Part shown: positions 1 through 6,804 of the stretch, piece after piece | Layout: each line of letters starts with the position of its first letter | How positions within the stretch are numbered: position 1 is the stretch's first letter | IMG/VR virus record: IMGVR_UViG_3300017469_000123 | Location: 1 to 7,421 of that record | Length of the DNA: 7,421 bases | Direction: 5' to 3' (one strand) | Program-made: the position numbers and the translations under genes | The notes under the pieces: generated by a model | Database searches by the model: none | Told to the model about the DNA's origin: nothing | Seen by the model: only the letters and a program-made list of their open reading frames with translations

Positions 1-1724
1 TTTATCTGCTCGAAAAGAGAGTTAGCTTGCATAGCGGAAGACATTGCGTTCTTTAACACCCTAAGAGCTTCAGTATAGTTGTTCATTAAAGCCAAGAAGT
101 ATGCTGATGGTGAACTGGCATTTACCTGTTGAGTTACGAGTGTGTTTACAGTGTTCAAGTAATCTAGTGTTTGTTGGGTCTTCTCAAGCCCTGACAGATA
201 AGTTTGCACCTGGGTTTGGTAGTTTTGTGCAATTTCAAACAGCTGTTTGGCGGAACTTTGCATATCATAGCTCTCGCTCGAACTTAACAACTGCAGAGCT
301 TGCGATATATCGCTTAGAATCGTATCCTTATTCGCTAGAATTGTTTTAATGGAGGACGATGTGTTGTTTTGTGGTGGCGTAAGCAATTGCTGAGCTTCTG
401 CTAACAACTGCATAGCTTGCGATATGTTCTTTGCGTCTTGGATATCACCCTGGACTGACTGCAAATTCATTTGAAGATATTGAGAAGCCCTTTCCAAAAC
501 CTGGTAGTTCTGCTGAAGAACCTGATACACGCTGTTGAAGTATTGAGAAAGAGAAAGGAATGTTTGTGTTGAAGGTGGTCTGGGTAATTGCTGTAAGCCC
601 TCCAAAATCGTAAAACCTTGAATATATGAAGTTAAATTTATGTTAATATCGTTCTGTTGTGCTATTTGCGAAGCTTGTTGTAGATATTGAACAGCCTCAG
701 AATAATTTCCACTTTGTGCTTCTTGTTGTCCTTTTTGTATATCTTCAAGTGTTTGCAGGTAAGCAGTGTATTTAGTATACATTCCCTGGACAGTTTCGGA
801 TAACGAACTTGCCAAACTTGATAACGGTGTATTGTCAGCGTTAACATTCTGCAATTGAATCTGTGCCTGTTTTATAAGGTTTATTGCACTCTGTATTGCA
901 GACGTTGAATTTCTATTCTGTTGTGCAATATTCTGTGCATTAACTAGCAGAGTGACTACACTCAGAAGCTGAGAGCTGACCTGTTCAGACTGTTGGTAAT
1001 CGTTTGCAAGAGATGAAAAACCATTGTAATAACCTGATGCTTCTGTAGCGTACTGTGATGCAGTGGCGAAGAACGATTTTAATGTTTGCAGGTATTGTTG
1101 TAACTCCTGTAATGTTATTTCTCCCTGTGGTGGTTGTGGGAACGCAGGTATCTTAGCTAAGTAAGAAACAGCTGTTGTTACGTCTTCAAGCCTCTTGTCG
1201 CTGATGTTATTTTGTTGTGCTAATTGCAGGGCTTGCTGAAGATACTGATAAGCTTCTGCGAAGTTTGCTTTTTCCAGTTCACTGTTAGCATTATTAATGT
1301 ATTGTCCTATCTGTTGTAGTGCCTGCACTGTCTGTATTTGTTGCTGTATTTGCGTTACGTTGATTACATTCGGGTATTGTTGGGCTATTTGTAGAGCTTG
1401 CTGAAGGTTACTCAAAGCAGTGTTGTAATCATCGTTCTTCAATGCCTCGTTTGCAGAATTGAAAAGCTGAATAACATTGATGTAAGCGAAATAAGGCTGT
1501 AAGTTAATGTTCGGGCTTAGCTTTTGTGCATTCTGCAAATCGGTTAATGCCTGGTTGACGTTACCGTTCTCTGCGTCATTAATTGCTTGTTGGACATATA
1601 TTAACGCTTGGATTTTTTGTGCAGTTTGAGTTAAACCGTTTTGTTCTGCTAATTGCAGGGCTTGTTGGTATTTGTCCTCAGAGAGTAACTGGTTTATCTG
1701 TTGTGTGATAGGATTAGCACTCAT
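1..1724 (-). CDS. Giant Gln-rich TPR-like alpha-helical repeat protein, probable virion/tail protein (3' end outside window)
   Basis: Manual translation from ATG at 1724 gives 574 codons with no stop to the window edge: MSANPITQQINQLLSEDKYQQALQLAEQNGLTQ...NFAEAYQYLQQALQLAQQNN...GNYSEAVQYLQQASQIAQQND...NAMSSAMQANSLFEQI. In-frame TGA upstream at 1737-1739; TATA box 24 bp upstream. Very large helical virion proteins are typical of bicaudaviruses (family knowledge); function is inferred. Confidence 0.9.
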   Translation of the reverse strand, partial: MSANPITQQINQLLSEDKYQQALQLAEQNGLTQTAQKIQALIYVQQAINDAENGNVNQALTDLQNAQKLSPNINLQPYFAYINVIQLFNSANEALKNDDYNTALSNLQQALQIAQQYPNVINVTQIQQQIQTVQALQQIGQYINNANSELEKANFAEAYQYLQQALQLAQQNNISDKRLEDVTTAVSYLAKIPAFPQPPQGEITLQELQQYLQTLKSFFATASQYATEASGYYNGFSSLANDYQQSEQVSSQLLSVVTLLVNAQNIAQQNRNSTSAIQSAINLIKQAQIQLQNVNADNTPLSSLASSLSETVQGMYTKYTAYLQTLEDIQKGQQEAQSGNYSEAVQYLQQASQIAQQNDININLTSYIQGFTILEGLQQLPRPPSTQTFLSLSQYFNSVYQVLQQNYQVLERASQYLQMNLQSVQGDIQDAKNISQAMQLLAEAQQLLTPPQNNTSSSIKTILANKDTILSDISQALQLLSSSESYDMQSSAKQLFEIAQNYQTQVQTYLSGLEKTQQTLDYLNTVNTLVTQQVNASSPSAYFLALMNNYTEALRVLKNAMSSAMQANSLFEQI

Positions 1725-2840: not shown

Positions 2841-5096
2841 TTAGATCTTGAAGCCCTGCTTTACCATTTCAAGTATCTTCTTAGCTTTTTCCTCTTCGCC
2901 CTGCGTTAATTTACTAATATTTTGGTTCATCAGCTGTTCTTTCTTTAATTCAGACAGATAGTTGTAATAGTTAACAAGAGCGAACAGTGTACCGAATAGA
3001 TTGATTAATTGTATTCTGTACTTTGGATTCCTTCCAGTTTCCTTTGCAACATTATCTATGAACTTGTCCTTAAGTGTCTCGGGGAACGCTGATAACTCTT
3101 GCCTCGCCTTGTACAAGCAGATTTCATCCTCTTCCGAGCATATCCCTAGTAGTTTAACTATAGTTTTGAACACCTGCATGTCGAGGGTTGAGGGGCTTAT
3201 AGTAGTTTTAACAATTAACGCACCGTACTGATCGTCAAAAGCTTTCTTTGCAAAATTCAAAAGTGATTTTAATTCCTGCAATTGCCCTTCATTTGCTTGG
3301 TTGAGGTCGAAGTCATTTATCCTTAGTATAGCATACTTGCGGTCTGGCGATAACCCATTAACCGACCCGACCAACAACGTGTTATTTTTATCTACAAACA
3401 AGGGTAACGAGAGACCTGCAGACCGTAGCTCTGTAAAAGCGTCAACAAGGTCTTGAAGGTATTTAAGCTTCTGAGGGTCGGCATTCTTAAGGTTCTGTAT
3501 ACTTTCGATCATGCCGTAACTCTTATTCTCGAACAAATTTGTGAATGAGAAGATCAAATAGGCATCCTTGTATAATTGCACCATGGCACTCAGTTCTTTT
3601 TGATACCTCTCGAACTCGTCTGGGCTTAACGGTCTGATGACTCTTAAGTCTAACACTTGATCGGGAGCGAAAGAGTCTAACAGCTGTATAAGATAATTTT
3701 GTCTAAGTTCTGCGAATACATTAGATAAAACGCTCCTGGTAGTCTCTTCTACAACGCTTCCCTGCTTGTACGTAACTTTCTTGCTTGAAGATTTGTATTC
3801 AGATGGGAATTTGGTGACTAACGCCAAGACGGTAGTAGGGAGAACGCTGGCGTTGTTAGTCTCTAACAGTTCTAGTATCCTGTTCCAATTCTTTTGTAAC
3901 TCGTTCCAGACCTTTTCAGCAAACTCTTCACGCTCTTTTCTGCTTAAAGATTCCCCTTGCCTTATGCCGTATCTGTTTAAGTATGGTCTTAGCCAATCTG
4001 GAATGTATAGTGAAAGTTCCATATTGAGCACTTTTTCTAATTCTAATTTATTTTGCTCAATATTACTATTTTCTACCGCATTCTGTTGTTCCTGAGCTTG
4101 AGGAGCGGGGGTCTGTTGAGGAGTACCTTGCTGTTGAGGGGTAGCTTGAGGAGTGGGAACCTGTTGAGGTTGAGGATTACCGAAAACTATTACATCATTT
4201 TTTTCGAGATTGATTACACGTTCGTTTCCTGTGAGATATTGCGAATAGTTTCCTTTCGGTAAAAGTACCGCAGGAGAAGATCCATATGTGCCTATAACCG
4301 CTTCTGCAATAAGATCAATCGGTAACTTTTCAAGGAATTTTTGTAACTCAGGACTCTCAACATTTTCACTAGGTATAAATTCTGCTGGTGGTATGGTAAC
4401 GTTGCCATGATTTTGTTGGTACTGAGATAGCAGGAAATCGGAAATTTCATTTACAATCCCCTTGGGGATGAGTATAATGTGCGGGTATAAGTCCTTCCTG
4501 AAGGAAGTGTGAATCGCATATGCGGTATAGAAATTTTCTCGGAGTGCAGGATTAACGGATTCTAATGTTTGAATTAACGTCTTTACTTTTGCCTCAGCTG
4601 ATTTCGTTTCTTCTTCTGATTTGCTGTTACCAAATGGAACTTTTGGATATAGGTGGATCACATCAAAAACAAAACCTTTACTTGTAACACCTTCTATTAC
4701 ATTAACATTCATAGTCTTCTCATAAAGCGAAAAACCATATGCATCGATTACCTTGCTGACATTACCTAAATTGAGGTGTATAGTCTTTTCTTTATTCTCT
4801 TCGCCATATTTCACTTCTATGTCATCTGGGTTCTTGATGGGATTTCTCCCTTCCGGAGTACTTACTTTAAGTATAAATGGCATATATCCTTGCGAGTTCA
4901 CAAAACTAAATGTTGCCATAGGCTGATAGTTAACTAATGTTAATGATCCGTCAAACTTCTTTGACGCTTCTTTGCCAAATGCAAAATCTCTACTAGATGC
5001 CAAGAACTTAGAAAAAACCTTGACGAGATAGTCATCTAACGGAACGAGCGAAGGTGAAGCATTCGAAGCTGAAGCCAAAGCATTGTTACTACTCAT
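2841..5096 (-). CDS. Hypothetical 751-aa two-domain viral protein (alpha/beta N-half, P/Q/T linker, helical C-half)
   Basis: Long ORF with its own TATA box and SD-like GAGTGATG (5110-5103). No Walker A, MIDAS or nuclease motif recognised. Confidence 0.9.
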   Translation of the reverse strand: MSSNNALASASNASPSLVPLDDYLVKVFSKFLASSRDFAFGKEASKKFDGSLTLVNYQPMATFSFVNSQGYMPFILKVSTPEGRNPIKNPDDIEVKYGEENKEKTIHLNLGNVSKVIDAYGFSLYEKTMNVNVIEGVTSKGFVFDVIHLYPKVPFGNSKSEEETKSAEAKVKTLIQTLESVNPALRENFYTAYAIHTSFRKDLYPHIILIPKGIVNEISDFLLSQYQQNHGNVTIPPAEFIPSENVESPELQKFLEKLPIDLIAEAVIGTYGSSPAVLLPKGNYSQYLTGNERVINLEKNDVIVFGNPQPQQVPTPQATPQQQGTPQQTPAPQAQEQQNAVENSNIEQNKLELEKVLNMELSLYIPDWLRPYLNRYGIRQGESLSRKEREEFAEKVWNELQKNWNRILELLETNNASVLPTTVLALVTKFPSEYKSSSKKVTYKQGSVVEETTRSVLSNVFAELRQNYLIQLLDSFAPDQVLDLRVIRPLSPDEFERYQKELSAMVQLYKDAYLIFSFTNLFENKSYGMIESIQNLKNADPQKLKYLQDLVDAFTELRSAGLSLPLFVDKNNTLLVGSVNGLSPDRKYAILRINDFDLNQANEGQLQELKSLLNFAKKAFDDQYGALIVKTTISPSTLDMQVFKTIVKLLGICSEEDEICLYKARQELSAFPETLKDKFIDNVAKETGRNPKYRIQLINLFGTLFALVNYYNYLSELKKEQLMNQNISKLTQGEEEKAKKILEMVKQGFKI
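4083..4175. repeat. Low-complexity degenerate repeats encoding PQPQQVPTPQATPQQQGTPQQTPAPQAQEQQ
   Basis: ctgttgagg at 4113, 4131 and 4161; 27-nt direct repeat 4095-4121 vs 4143-4169 (23/27 identical). Confidence 0.8.
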
Positions 5097-5109
5097 TTTT
5101 TACATCACT

Positions 5110-5146
5110 CAAACATATGTTTGCTTGTAGTTATTAAAAACTTTTC
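5110..5146 (-). promoter_or_regulatory. BRE-like GAAAAG + TATA (TTTTTAATAA, 5140-5131) followed by 14-bp palindrome CAAACATATGTTTG (5110-5123)
   Basis: Read directly upstream of the 751-aa ORF. Confidence 0.8.
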
Positions 5147-5149
5147 TTG

Positions 5150-5200
5150 GTGACCTCCCTCCCCGCTCTGAAGGGCGAGGTTTGCCGTTCGCTTTGTCGG
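5150..5200 (-). mobile_element. Minimal IS200/IS605-derived non-autonomous element (PATE-like, fused left/right end, single hairpin)
   Basis: Minus strand: TTTAA|CCGACAAAGCGAACGGCAAACCTCGCCCTTCAGAGCGGGGAGGGAGGTCAC. It is a GC-rich island with the CCTCGCCCTTCAGrGCGGGGAGG hairpin typical of Sulfolobales IS605 ends, a TTTAA target on the 5' side, a TCAC-type 3' end and no target duplication. The end sequences are compared from memory. Confidence 0.7.
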
Positions 5201-6037
5201 TTAAATTATGTGGAGACCGAATATTACTGCTAACAACATCATCCCCACTATACCGAGCACGAAGTATAACATTATCCTGTTCATTGATTGCACACGCTTA
5301 CTCTCATTCTGCAACTTCAATAACTTCACTAAATTTGCATTCATCTCCTTAACCGTCGTGGGTATCGTGCTTAATATCTCCAACTCTTGCGATAGTCGAC
5401 GGTTAAGCAACAATTTAGGGTCAACAGCGATAGAAAGTTTTGTGGAAGGAGAGAGCGTTATAGCACCGGTAATCATCTTTTTGACCTTAGCCAACTGTGC
5501 TAGTAAGTCTGGTTCCGCTGTATCATACTCAGACACAGGTATCGATGTTTCTAACGTCTCTAATCTTATCGCATATGGCATTGTGTTGTTTTTCCTTATT
5601 GTGATCAACAACGGTCTATGCATCTTCCCGTATTGTATCATCCCGACCATGGATTCCGAGGTGACCGGGACAATTAGCTCTTCGCCTGTAACTGGGTCAT
5701 GGACTGTGTACAACGACGGCGATAATTTTTCGCCTACGTATAGTTGAGCAGACCTAGTAGATATATCAACGTTGACAACTACAACGTCACTATTCTTAGA
5801 GCGACGGATTTGCCTTATTAGCCCATTTCTTATGGGGTCTTTCATATACGACCTTCTGAACGTTACGTATACAACAATAAATACTACAAATAGTATACCT
5901 AGAGCGATAAAAATGTAAACATATGGCGGAGATAATAGCATTCGAAATAACGAGAAAACTGTAACTTGTTGAGCTTGTGTGTGTGGGGCTACAGTGTTTG
6001 TCAAACTTATGTTTGAAGACGGTGTTTTCAGTGCCAT
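5201..6037 (-). CDS. Membrane protein with N- and C-terminal TM helices and a pre-C-terminal coiled coil (278 aa)
   Basis: TM1 YVYIFIALGILFVVFIVVYVTF; TM2 IMLYFVLGIVGMMLLAVIFGL. Start moved from GTG 6097 to ATG 6037 because TTTTAAAA (6066-6059) lies ~22 nt upstream of it. Confidence 0.85.
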   Translation of the reverse strand: MALKTPSSNISLTNTVAPHTQAQQVTVFSLFRMLLSPPYVYIFIALGILFVVFIVVYVTFRRSYMKDPIRNGLIRQIRRSKNSDVVVVNVDISTRSAQLYVGEKLSPSLYTVHDPVTGEELIVPVTSESMVGMIQYGKMHRPLLITIRKNNTMPYAIRLETLETSIPVSEYDTAEPDLLAQLAKVKKMITGAITLSPSTKLSIAVDPKLLLNRRLSQELEILSTIPTTVKEMNANLVKLLKLQNESKRVQSMNRIMLYFVLGIVGMMLLAVIFGLHII

Positions 6038-6601: not shown

Positions 6602-6633
6602 AAACATCTGTTTGAGGTATTAATAAACTTTTC
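6602..6633 (-). promoter_or_regulatory. BRE-like GAAAAG + TATA (TTTATTAATA, 6627-6618) followed by palindrome AAACAGATGTTT (6602-6613)
   Basis: Read directly upstream of the capsid gene. Confidence 0.8.
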
Positions 6634-6763: not shown

Positions 6764-6804
6764 AAACAGATGTTTAAGAAAGATTTATATTTCCTGATCA
6801 GGAA
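6764..6804. promoter_or_regulatory. Possibly bidirectional TATA (ATTTATAT, 6783-6790) flanked by two different palindromes: AAACAGATGTTT (6764-6775) and TTCCTGATCAGGAA (6791-6804)
   Basis: Read directly; on the + strand a purine-rich BRE-like AAGAAAGA precedes TTTATAT. Confidence 0.7.

What the first reader, a model, noticed from the sequence alone, without database searches (positions are those of the whole stretch)
5150..5205. A ~51-bp minimal IS605 element: left-end start, one hairpin, right-end finish
Seen: a GC-rich insert beginning exactly after TTTAA, whose TAA is the stop of the 278-aa gene, and ending at GGTCAC just before the next BRE/TATA, so nothing is disrupted. Established: IS200/IS605 elements insert 3' of a short motif without target duplication, and TTTAA is the TAM reported for a Sulfolobus islandicus TnpB. 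Inference: recombination between the similar left- and right-end hairpins deleted tnpA/tnpB. The scar may still be mobilised in trans (PATE/REP-like), may shield the site from TnpB cutting of the empty allele, and may act as a 3' hairpin or insulator between the two genes.
Basis: partly seen in the sequence, partly recalled or inferred. Interest (0 to 1): 0.65.

Follow-up and report, generated by a model that had tools for sequence, protein, structure and literature searches.

The report
Solo-hairpin remnant of an IS200/IS605 transposon
The GC-rich 49-base stretch between two genes of this hot-spring archaeal virus is the shrunken remnant of an IS200/IS605 "jumping gene", reduced to its two tips and one hairpin; this kind of remnant is already known from salt-loving archaea, so it is a correct but fairly ordinary find.

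Summary
The window is a fragment of an SMV-like bicaudavirus of Sulfolobales, about 83% identical to SMV4 and SMV1. The GC-rich stretch is real. It lies on the gene-sense (minus) strand between the TAA stop of the 278-aa gene and the promoter of the 751-aa virion-protein gene.

It belongs to a repeated family of 47-51-nt elements (alignment A2; window 44/49 identical to the best copies). Copies occur in SMV1, SMV3 and thermoacidophilic archaeal genomes. Each copy has:
- the first ~17 nt of the left end of a full-length IS200/IS605 element;
- one subterminal hairpin;
- the last ~10 nt of the right end (window: TCAC where IS609 has TCAA).

Repeat-mediated deletion between hairpins is seen directly twice:
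- SMV1a lost the SMV1 transposon by a deletion whose junction lies inside two hairpin copies.
- This same spacer shows an empty, a full-length and a 48-nt form of another TnpB element.

Corrections:
- The element probably starts 2-3 nt after TTTAA.
- The family's conserved 5' flank is TGA, never TTTAA.
- No TTTAA|CAAG empty allele exists. The element replaces the ancestral T-rich spacer.

Equivalent 52-bp "terminal-only PATEs" were described in Haloquadratum in 2011. The proposed shielding and terminator roles are untested.

The parts
5204..6037 (-). 278-aa gene (P0001), homologue of SMV1 gp04, annotated there as 'conserved archaeal viral membrane protein'. Its stop TAA is at 5203..5201, inside TTTAA at 5205..5201.
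   Evidence: no Pfam hit
5181..5198 (-). Left-end-derived arm (GACAAAGCGAACGGCAAA). The first 1-2 nt may instead be flank. CC at 5200..5199 is flank.
   Evidence: Matches the start of full-length IS200/IS605 left ends in SMV1 and in Caldisphaera, Nitrososphaeria and Acidilobus. Family alignment A2. Flank statistics.
5161..5180 (-). Subterminal imperfect palindrome. 5' arm CCTCGCCC at 5180..5173, loop TTCA at 5172..5169, 3' arm GAGCGGGG at 5168..5161. One pair is broken by a private G-to-A change.
   Evidence: Consensus 8-9 bp stem in 15 copies. The same hairpin lies at right ends of IS609, Haloferax TnpB, pMGB1, ATV and SMV1 elements.
5150..5160 (-). Right-end tail AGGGAGGTCAC. TCAC at 5153..5150 is the homologue of the IS608/IS609 cleavage site TCAA and of the TCAG in family members.
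   Evidence: S. islandicus IS605 right ends finish in TTCAC
5130..5149 (-). Promoter of the downstream gene: CAAGAAAAG plus the TATA-like TTTTTAATAA at 5140..5131. Nearly invariant in all alleles.
5110..5123 (.). Palindrome CAAACATATGTTTG between the TATA-like box and the ATG. Context only, not part of the element.
   Evidence: 6 copies in the window against 0.02 expected
2844..5096 (-). 751-aa gene (P0002), homologue of SMV1 gp05, an abundant virion protein.

Best explanation
Window 5198..5150 (minus strand, about 47-49 nt) is a 'terminal-only' derivative of an IS200/IS605-family insertion sequence of the lineage resident in SMV1. It keeps the first ~17 nt of the left end, one subterminal hairpin, and the last ~11 nt of the right end, including the cleavage-site homologue TCAC.

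Most likely history (inferred):
1. A full-length or tnpB-only element inserted on the gene-sense strand just downstream of the stop codon of the 278-aa gene.
2. A repeat-mediated deletion (slippage or homologous recombination) then joined its left-end hairpin to a directly repeated hairpin downstream. That partner was either its own right-end hairpin or the older right-end relic that nearly all alleles carry just before CAAG.
3. The deletion removed tnpA/tnpB and the T-rich ancestral spacer in one step.

The product lacks any coding capacity and is too short to supply a TnpB guide-RNA scaffold. It is best regarded as a tolerated scar in one of the few places where this compact viral genome accepts insertions. 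It may still be a substrate for TnpA supplied in trans. Like its relatives, it is a short direct repeat that can seed further deletions and rearrangements.

Shown: homology to left and right ends; family membership; hairpin-to-hairpin deletions in relatives. Inferred: the order of events at this site; present inertness.
For: - Identity of the virus: 83% nucleotide identity to SMV4/SMV1 with the same gene order.
- Family: the 51-mer hits SMV3 and SMV1 intergenic copies (E 1e-5). There are 14 further copies in viruses and in Caldisphaera, Marsarchaeota, Nitrososphaeria and Acidilobus genomes. The window is 44/49 identical to the best of them.
- Left-end origin of the 5' arm: the SMV1 annotated IS200/IS605 begins GACAAATGAACGACAAG followed by the hairpin. 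Its tnpA scores Y1_Tnp 5.6e-43 and its tnpB OrfB_IS605 4e-39. Host genomes show the same start followed by a TATA box and tnpA/tnpB.
- Right-end origin of the hairpin and tail: the SMV1 right end reads GGGAAC, hairpin, AGGAAGTCAG. pMGB1/ATV, Haloferax TnpB and Klebsiella IS609 right ends read the same way and end in GTCAG or GTCAA.
- Size series in hosts: 1.8 kb (tnpA+tnpB), 1.5 kb (tnpB only), 0.25-0.39 kb, 47 nt.
- The deletion mechanism seen directly:
  - SMV1a equals SMV1 minus ~1.9 kb, with the junction inside the shared CCTCGCCCT of two hairpin copies. The loss of the IS is reported in PMC12199143.
  - In this same spacer, L060 is empty, L068/L074 carry a 1.47-kb TnpB-like element and L064 carries its 48-nt solo-hairpin form at the same point.
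  - L008 is a mini built from a different (ATV-type) left end.
- Minis carry right-end-type, left-end-type or hybrid hairpins, so crossover points differ and formation is recurrent.
- One clean 44-45-nt insertion without target duplication: SMV1 mini 2 against SMV3/SMV4.
- The core 5158-5195 is highly multi-copy with heterogeneous flanks in hot-spring metagenome contigs.
- Prior description of the same process: PMC3119063.
Against: - No full-length element of this left-end type, and no simple empty allele, was found at this exact site among about 35 alleles. The in-situ history is therefore inferred by analogy.
- The window's left flank reads CCG(A) where 30 of 32 copies have T before GA.
- The right end finishes in TCAC, not the family's TCAG.
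- The hairpin in this copy is slightly degraded and not thermodynamically exceptional.
- No tnpA lies in the 7.4-kb fragment, which is only ~14% of a genome.
Confidence: 0.85

Rival explanations
1. The 47-49-nt element arrived already in its minimal form, mobilised in trans by a TnpA from a co-resident IS (REP- or PATE-like transposition of a single-hairpin unit). It was not formed by decay of a full-length copy at this site.
For: - The family is multi-copy in several genomes. Copies within a genome resemble each other more than they resemble sampled full-length ends. The two SMV1 minis share GATAAAT and AGGAGGTCAG, against GACAAAT and AGGAAGTCAG in the resident IS; three Marsarchaeota minis share one arm.
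- SMV1 mini 2 is a clean 44-45-nt insertion.
- The core is hugely over-represented in metagenome contigs.
- Dyall-Smith et al. inferred possible mobility of 52-bp forms.
Against: - Simple insertion would leave the ancestral T-rich spacer and the hairpin relic on either side, as in L079. In the window both are gone, so extra deletions are needed.
- The known TnpA mechanism uses two hairpins, one per end. Mobility of a single-hairpin unit has not been shown.
- The varied crossover types show that many minis arise independently.
Confidence: 0.25
2. It is a solo right end left by an arbitrary 5' truncation: the last ~50 nt of a tnpB gene and its right end, with no left-end material.
For: - Frame 2 of the 51-mer reads like a TnpB C-terminal tail (my reading).
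- Haloferax and Azotobacter right-end regions match query positions 5-43 and 14-45.
Against: - The arm GCGAACGGCAAA matches left ends of the thermoacidophile family at 11/12. It matches the Haloferax right end at 8/12 and the SMV1 right end at 4/12.
- All 15 minis begin at the same position as full-length left ends (GAYAAA) and are followed immediately upstream by unrelated DNA. Random truncation would not give this.
Confidence: 0.05
3. It is a virus-owned regulatory hairpin (a 3' stabiliser, terminator or insulator between the two genes) whose likeness to IS ends is incidental or the result of domestication.
For: - It sits on the sense strand just 3' of a stop codon and 5' of a promoter, as does the SMV3 copy.
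- Nearly all alleles keep some hairpin-like relic plus (T/A)CAG just before CAAG, even where the upstream gene differs (L072, L078).
- One metatranscriptome contig contains the core.
Against: - The spacer sequence is not conserved among alleles, while the promoter beside it is almost invariant.
- Folding energy equals that of shuffles.
- SMV1 copies lie antisense to their neighbours.
- Other alleles carry oligo-T tracts after the stop, which the element has displaced. From general knowledge, archaeal termination relies on such tracts.
- Homology to IS ends is extensive and specific.
Confidence: 0.05

Closest known systems
Terminal-only 52-bp PATEs of Haloquadratum walsbyi (derived from ISHwa23 and HqIRS46; Dyall-Smith et al. 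2011, PMC3119063)
   Same: - About 50 bp long, with no ORF, no inverted terminal repeats and no target duplication.
- Consist of the fused termini of an IS605-type element with one near-terminal palindrome.
- Formed by repeat-mediated deletion between the two palindromes.
- Possible mobility inferred from strain-specific insertions.
   Different: - Different host lineage (haloarchaeal chromosome, against a virus of thermoacidophilic Thermoproteota) and a different parent IS.
The IS200/IS605 element resident in SMV1 (annotated mobile_element, HG322870 25272-27062; called ISC1467-like in PMC3839810)
   Same: - Left end starts GACAAATGAACGACAAG followed by the hairpin.
- Right end is hairpin plus AGGAAGTCAG.
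- Same virus family.
   Different: - It is 1.8 kb, with tnpA (Y1_Tnp) and tnpB, and has two hairpins.
- The window element has lost everything between the hairpins and differs at several positions. It is closer to the Marsarchaeota and Nitrososphaeria minis (44/49) than to the SMV1 copies (40-41/49).
IS608/IS609 right end (Helicobacter / Enterobacteria)
   Same: - Nearly the same right-end hairpin (CCTCGCCC TTCA GGGCGGGG), followed by about 10 nt ending in TCAA. The window ends in TCAC.
- Single-strand 'peel and paste' family logic, with no target duplication.
   Different: - Bacterial and full length.
- From general knowledge, the target is TTAC and the left cleavage site lies 19 nt from the hairpin. 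Here the arm is about 17 nt and the conserved flank is TGA.
REP elements and RAYT (TnpA-REP)
   Same: A single short hairpin with a conserved flanking oligonucleotide, multi-copy and intergenic, related to the IS200/IS605 Y1 transposase system (general knowledge).
   Different: - REPs are host-domesticated and associated with a dedicated RAYT gene. They do not consist of fused left-end and right-end tips.
- No RAYT was examined here.
SMN1/SMN2 non-autonomous elements of Sulfolobus, SMV1 and pMGB1
   Same: Non-autonomous elements without inverted repeats, thought to be mobilised by the IS200 transposase and present in SMV1 and pMGB1.
   Different: - They are described as carrying small putative ORFs, so they are much longer.
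- Their relation to the 47-nt minis was not tested.

Membership tests
IS200/IS605-derived non-autonomous element (PATE, terminal-only form) | Subterminal imperfect palindrome homologous to those of IS200/IS605 ends | tested here: met
   BLASTN-short hits and direct comparison with right ends of SMV1, pMGB1, ATV, Haloferax TnpB and IS609. Consensus stem in 15 copies.
IS200/IS605-derived non-autonomous element (PATE, terminal-only form) | 5' tip homologous to a left end and 3' tip homologous to a right end of a full-length element | tested here: met
   The arm matches left ends that are followed by a TATA box and tnpA/tnpB. The tail AGG(G)AGGTCA(C/G) matches right ends.
IS200/IS605-derived non-autonomous element (PATE, terminal-only form) | No terminal inverted repeats and no coding capacity | tested here: met
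   Read directly from the sequence: 47-49 nt, and the ends are unrelated to each other.
IS200/IS605-derived non-autonomous element (PATE, terminal-only form) | Insertion without target-site duplication | tested here: inconclusive
   Met for a sister copy: SMV1 mini 2 against the empty sites in SMV3 and SMV4. No empty allele exists for the window's own copy.
IS200/IS605-derived non-autonomous element (PATE, terminal-only form) | Conserved short target motif immediately 5' of the left end | tested here: inconclusive
   The family shows T-G-A at or just before the start (T in 30/32, G in 29/32). The window has C-G-A. Three host copies (L091, L124, L134) also read CGA by eye; the stricter tally captured 2 copies with C at that position. 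TTTAA is not the flank in any copy.
IS200/IS605-derived non-autonomous element (PATE, terminal-only form) | A cognate Y1 transposase (TnpA) available in trans | tested here: inconclusive
   None in the 7.4-kb window, which is 14% of a genome. Present in SMV1 and in hot-spring archaeal genomes carrying the same left end.
IS200/IS605-derived non-autonomous element (PATE, terminal-only form) | Actual mobility (excision and integration by TnpA) | not testable with these tools
   Only indirect evidence: multi-copy with heterogeneous flanks.
TnpB guide-RNA (omega/reRNA) locus | A scaffold long enough to load TnpB, followed by a guide | tested here: not met
   Only about 30 nt of right-end-derived sequence remain. 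SisTnpB7 loses activity when the CDS-derived scaffold is below 113 nt (PMC11043419). No Rfam family was matched.
S. islandicus REY15A-type IS605 (TAM TTTAA, right end TTCAC) | Left end directly 3' of TTTAA; right end ending in TTCAC | tested here: not met
   The element is offset 2-3 nt from TTTAA and ends in GTCAC. Its arm and hairpin belong to the SMV1-type family, whose flank is TGA. The REY15A-like type is represented at this spacer by the L023 element instead, which ends in GTTCAC.

The most novel reading that the evidence does not exclude
The 44-51-nt single-hairpin units are themselves active transposons. They would be the smallest mobile DNA known, moved by IS200-type TnpA in trans between Sulfolobales viruses, plasmids and phylogenetically distant hot-spring archaea (Marsarchaeota, Caldisphaera, Nitrososphaeria). 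Their scattered direct repeats would be a main driver of deletion and module shuffling in bicaudavirus genomes, as in SMV1 to SMV1a and in the alleles with a different upstream gene joined at the hairpin.
Probability: 0.25. Interest if true: 0.6.

Novelty: new member of a known kind. Interest (0 to 1): 0.35.

Why it matters
- It explains why one short spacer is hypervariable while the genes and the promoter around it are strongly conserved. The spacer is a repeatedly used landing and decay site for IS200/IS605/TnpB elements; at least four element types were seen among about 35 alleles.
- It shows that 'terminal-only' remnants, so far described in Haloquadratum, are also common in viruses and genomes of acidic hot springs.
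- It gives a concrete molecular account of how SMV1a lost its transposon: deletion between two hairpin copies, not TnpA excision.
- For annotation, these ~48-nt repeats mark former TnpB/IS insertions and likely recombination break-points.
- For TnpB biology, they offer natural substrates to ask whether one hairpin is enough for TnpA.

Tried and rejected
- Folding 5130-5215 as RNA and as DNA on both strands gave z-scores near 0. Structure alone gives no signal.
- The Rfam scan at E<=1 gave only a sub-threshold HgcC match (19.6 bits against a gathering score of 50, E 0.39). I treat it as noise from the GC-rich hairpin.
- An exact hairpin pattern was too strict and missed SMV3. It was replaced by fuzzy matching on fetched genomes.
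- The bacterial hits of the 18-mer scan in genome contigs lack the hairpin and are chance.
- Public runs: no run holds more than 24% of the window's words, and no contig bridges the element with both flanks. The reads therefore gave neither an empty nor a full-length allele of this exact virus.
- I tried to derive guide/cleavage-site pairing rules for the left boundary by analogy with IS608. The result was ambiguous, so the boundary is left uncertain by about 2 nt.
- A possible covariation was noted but not tested further: GAAT with TCAA in IS609 and Haloferax, against GAAC with TCAG in Sulfolobales.
- The large protein searches, structure prediction and complex prediction were not used, because the question is about non-coding DNA.

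Full report
**What the window is.** The 7.4-kb window is an IMG/VR fragment, about 14% complete. It comes from a virus close to the Sulfolobus monocaudaviruses: positions 4600-5800 are 83% identical to SMV4 and SMV1 and 74% to SMV3, with the same gene order. The genes read on the minus strand.
- The 278-aa ORF (6037..5204, P0001) is the homologue of SMV1 gp04, annotated there as 'conserved archaeal viral membrane protein'.
- The 751-aa ORF (5096..2844, P0002) is the homologue of gp05, an abundant virion protein.

**The observation.** On the minus strand the stop TAA (5203..5201) lies in TTTAA. It is followed by a 51-nt GC-rich stretch ending in GGTCAC (5200..5150). Next come CAAGAAAAG, a TATA-like TTTTTAATAA (5140..5131), the palindrome CAAACATATGTTTG (5123..5110) and the ATG at 5096.
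- The stretch is real, but it is not extra length.
- In SMV1, SMV1a, SMV3 and SMV4, in 14 IMG/VR loci and in 27 metagenome loci, the spacer is 39-59 nt when it holds no element (TTTAA to the TATA-like box). The window's spacer is 60 nt.
- Those other spacers are T-rich and end in a degenerate hairpin followed by (T/A)CAG.
- The stop region and the promoter are almost invariant, while the spacer is unalignable.
- No allele reads TTTAA|CAAGAAAAG.
- The fold of the window's stretch is no better than that of shuffled sequence, and Rfam gives nothing.

**What it is.**
- *Database matches.* BLASTN-short with the 51-mer finds an intergenic copy in SMV3 (85% over 48 nt, E 1e-5) and another in SMV1 (90% over 40 nt). 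It also finds sites immediately 3' of tnpB genes in ATV, in plasmid pMGB1 and in a Haloferax plasmid, and sites inside the IS609 tnpB fragments of many Klebsiella plasmids.
- *Right ends.* Read side by side, these right ends are GGGAA(T/C), then the hairpin CCTCGCCC-TTCA-GGGCGGGG, then AGGA(T/G)GTCA(A/G). The window has the same hairpin with one private change, followed by AGGGAGGTCAC.
- *Left end.* The annotated IS200/IS605 of SMV1 begins GACAAATGAACGACAAG, then the hairpin, then a TATA box. Its tnpA scores Y1_Tnp 5.6e-43 and its tnpB OrfB_IS605 4e-39. Its right end is of the type just described.
- *Architecture.* The window element therefore has a left-end arm, one hairpin and a right-end tail.
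- *Host genomes.* A scan of genome contigs for the arm plus the first hairpin arm found the same two classes in Caldisphaera, Acidilobus, Marsarchaeota, hot-spring Nitrososphaeria, Thermocladium and Metallosphaera. One class is left ends followed by a TATA box and tnpA/tnpB. The other is 47-51-nt minis followed by unrelated DNA.
- *Similarity and size series.* Fifteen minis align over their whole length (A2). The window is 44/49 identical to the best of them. Host genomes show the size series 1.8 kb, 1.5 kb, 0.25-0.39 kb and 47 nt.
- *Metagenomes.* In hot-spring metagenome contigs the core 5158-5195 is covered 10-300 times more than its flanks. The sequences on either side are heterogeneous, as expected for a dispersed repeat.

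**How it arose.** Three observations bear on this.
1. *SMV1a.* The laboratory derivative reported to have lost the IS200/605 transposon (PMC12199143) did not lose it by excision. It carries a ~1.9-kb deletion. The junction lies inside the CCTCGCCCT shared by a decayed hairpin beyond the right end and a mini beyond the left end, both in the same orientation.
2. *The same spacer in other viruses.* L060 is an empty site. L068 and L074 carry a 1.47-kb element at that point, with a 374-aa protein whose only Pfam hit is the TnpB-type TNB domain (2.4e-7). L064 carries a 48-nt form made of that element's first 12 nt, one hairpin and its right-end tail.
3. *A mini with a different left end.* L008 and its relatives carry a mini whose arm is the left end of a different IS type (the ATV and L023 type) joined to the same right-end tail.

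Minis also differ in whether the hairpin is of right-end, left-end or hybrid type. Crossovers therefore fell at different points, and the form arises recurrently.

For the window itself no full-length parent was found. The element abuts CAAG exactly where other alleles carry their hairpin relic plus TCAG, and the T-rich spacer is missing. The most economical history is therefore:
- insertion near the stop codon, as in L023, where a 412-aa TnpB element sits after TTTAC;
- then one deletion between the new left-end hairpin and a downstream hairpin.

This last step is inference.

- The literature point is right for S. islandicus REY15A IS605: insertion site and TAM TTTAA, right end TTCAC.
- This element belongs to another sub-family. 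Among 32 copies the base before GA is T in 30, the G is present in 29, and none has TTTAA.
- The window has CC or CCG between TTTAA and the element. The apparent fit with TTTAA is best explained by the stop-codon context.
- The exact left boundary is uncertain by about 2 nt. The single informative empty site (SMV1 mini 2 against SMV3 and SMV4) shows a 44-45-nt insertion without duplication.

**Function.**
- Nothing indicates a role for the virus. The spacer is not conserved, and the SMV1 copies lie antisense to their neighbours.
- The element has displaced the oligo-T tract that other alleles have after the stop. The first T5 downstream is now the TATA-like box itself, so read-through into the virion-protein gene is conceivable but untested.
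- A guide-RNA role is unlikely, because only ~30 nt of right-end sequence remain against at least 113 nt needed by SisTnpB7.
- The 'shield' idea is logically sound, since the element separates any 5' motif from the downstream target. It presupposes a TnpB programmed with this flank, and I found no sign of one.

**Comparison with what is known.** The closest description is the 'terminal-only' 52-bp PATE of Haloquadratum walsbyi. It is formed by repeat-mediated deletion between the two near-terminal palindromes of ISHwa23 or HqIRS46, and mobility was suggested by six strain-specific insertions (PMC3119063). PATE-like elements are also noted in Geobacillus, and SMN2 elements in SMV1 and pMGB1. 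In the searches I ran I found no description of these ~48-nt forms in Sulfolobales viruses or thermoacidophiles. I rate the finding as a new member of a known kind.

**Verdict.**
- Interest is moderate to low.

Noticed in passing
window 237-248, 1739-1750, 2809-2820, 5111-5122, 6602-6613, 6764-6775: The palindrome AAACA-NN-TGTTT (often CAAACAnnTGTTTG) occurs 6 times against 0.02 expected. At 5123..5110 it sits between a TATA-like box and the start codon; the other five copies were not individually checked against TATA boxes and start codons. The same motif stands in SMV1 and SMV3 promoters. This is an operator-like position, so it is probably the binding site of a viral or host regulator.
   Followed up: partly
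L023:2258-3675 (= L013, L071); L027:2481-3952 (= L012, L068, L074); L064; L008/L067/L084/L079: The gp04-gp05-like spacer is an insertion hot spot. At least four different IS200/IS605/TnpB-type elements or their minis occupy it in different viral contigs. They include a 412-aa TnpB element after TTTAC and a 1.47-kb element carrying a 374-aa TnpB-like gene.
   Followed up: partly
L027:2481-2620: The left ~170 nt of the 1.47-kb element are GC-rich and look highly structured, upstream of an AT-rich promoter-like stretch. This may be a non-coding RNA or an unusually long left end. A small ORF that looked AbrB-like by eye lies between this region and the TnpB-like gene. I could not confirm it, because my coordinates gave stops.
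   Followed up: no
SMV1 HG322870 25205-25224 and 27130-27165; SMV1a PQ221053 24133-24173: SMV1a's loss of the IS200/IS605 element is a ~1.9-kb deletion between two directly repeated hairpin copies. It is not a transposase-mediated excision. The published description only says that the transposon was lost.
   Followed up: yes
L072, L078, L082, L085 (metagenome contigs): A different gene lies upstream of the same hairpin relic, (T/A)CAG and gp05-type promoter. This suggests module exchange with a break-point at the hairpin.
   Followed up: no
SMV1 HG322870 22415-22455 (SMV1a 21299-21339): A further left-end-like fragment of the same family (88% over 41 nt). It may be the end of an SMN2-type element.
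   Followed up: no
window 4095-4181 (P0002 about aa 305-335): A Gln/Pro-rich low-complexity linker encoded by short tandem-like repeats in the virion-protein gene.
   Followed up: no
IS609/Haloferax against pMGB1/SMV1 right ends (L039, L040, L033, L031): The four bases 5' of the hairpin and the terminal four bases change together: GAAT with TCAA, against GAAC with TCAG. This fits the known guide/cleavage-site pairing of IS608-type ends.
   Followed up: partly
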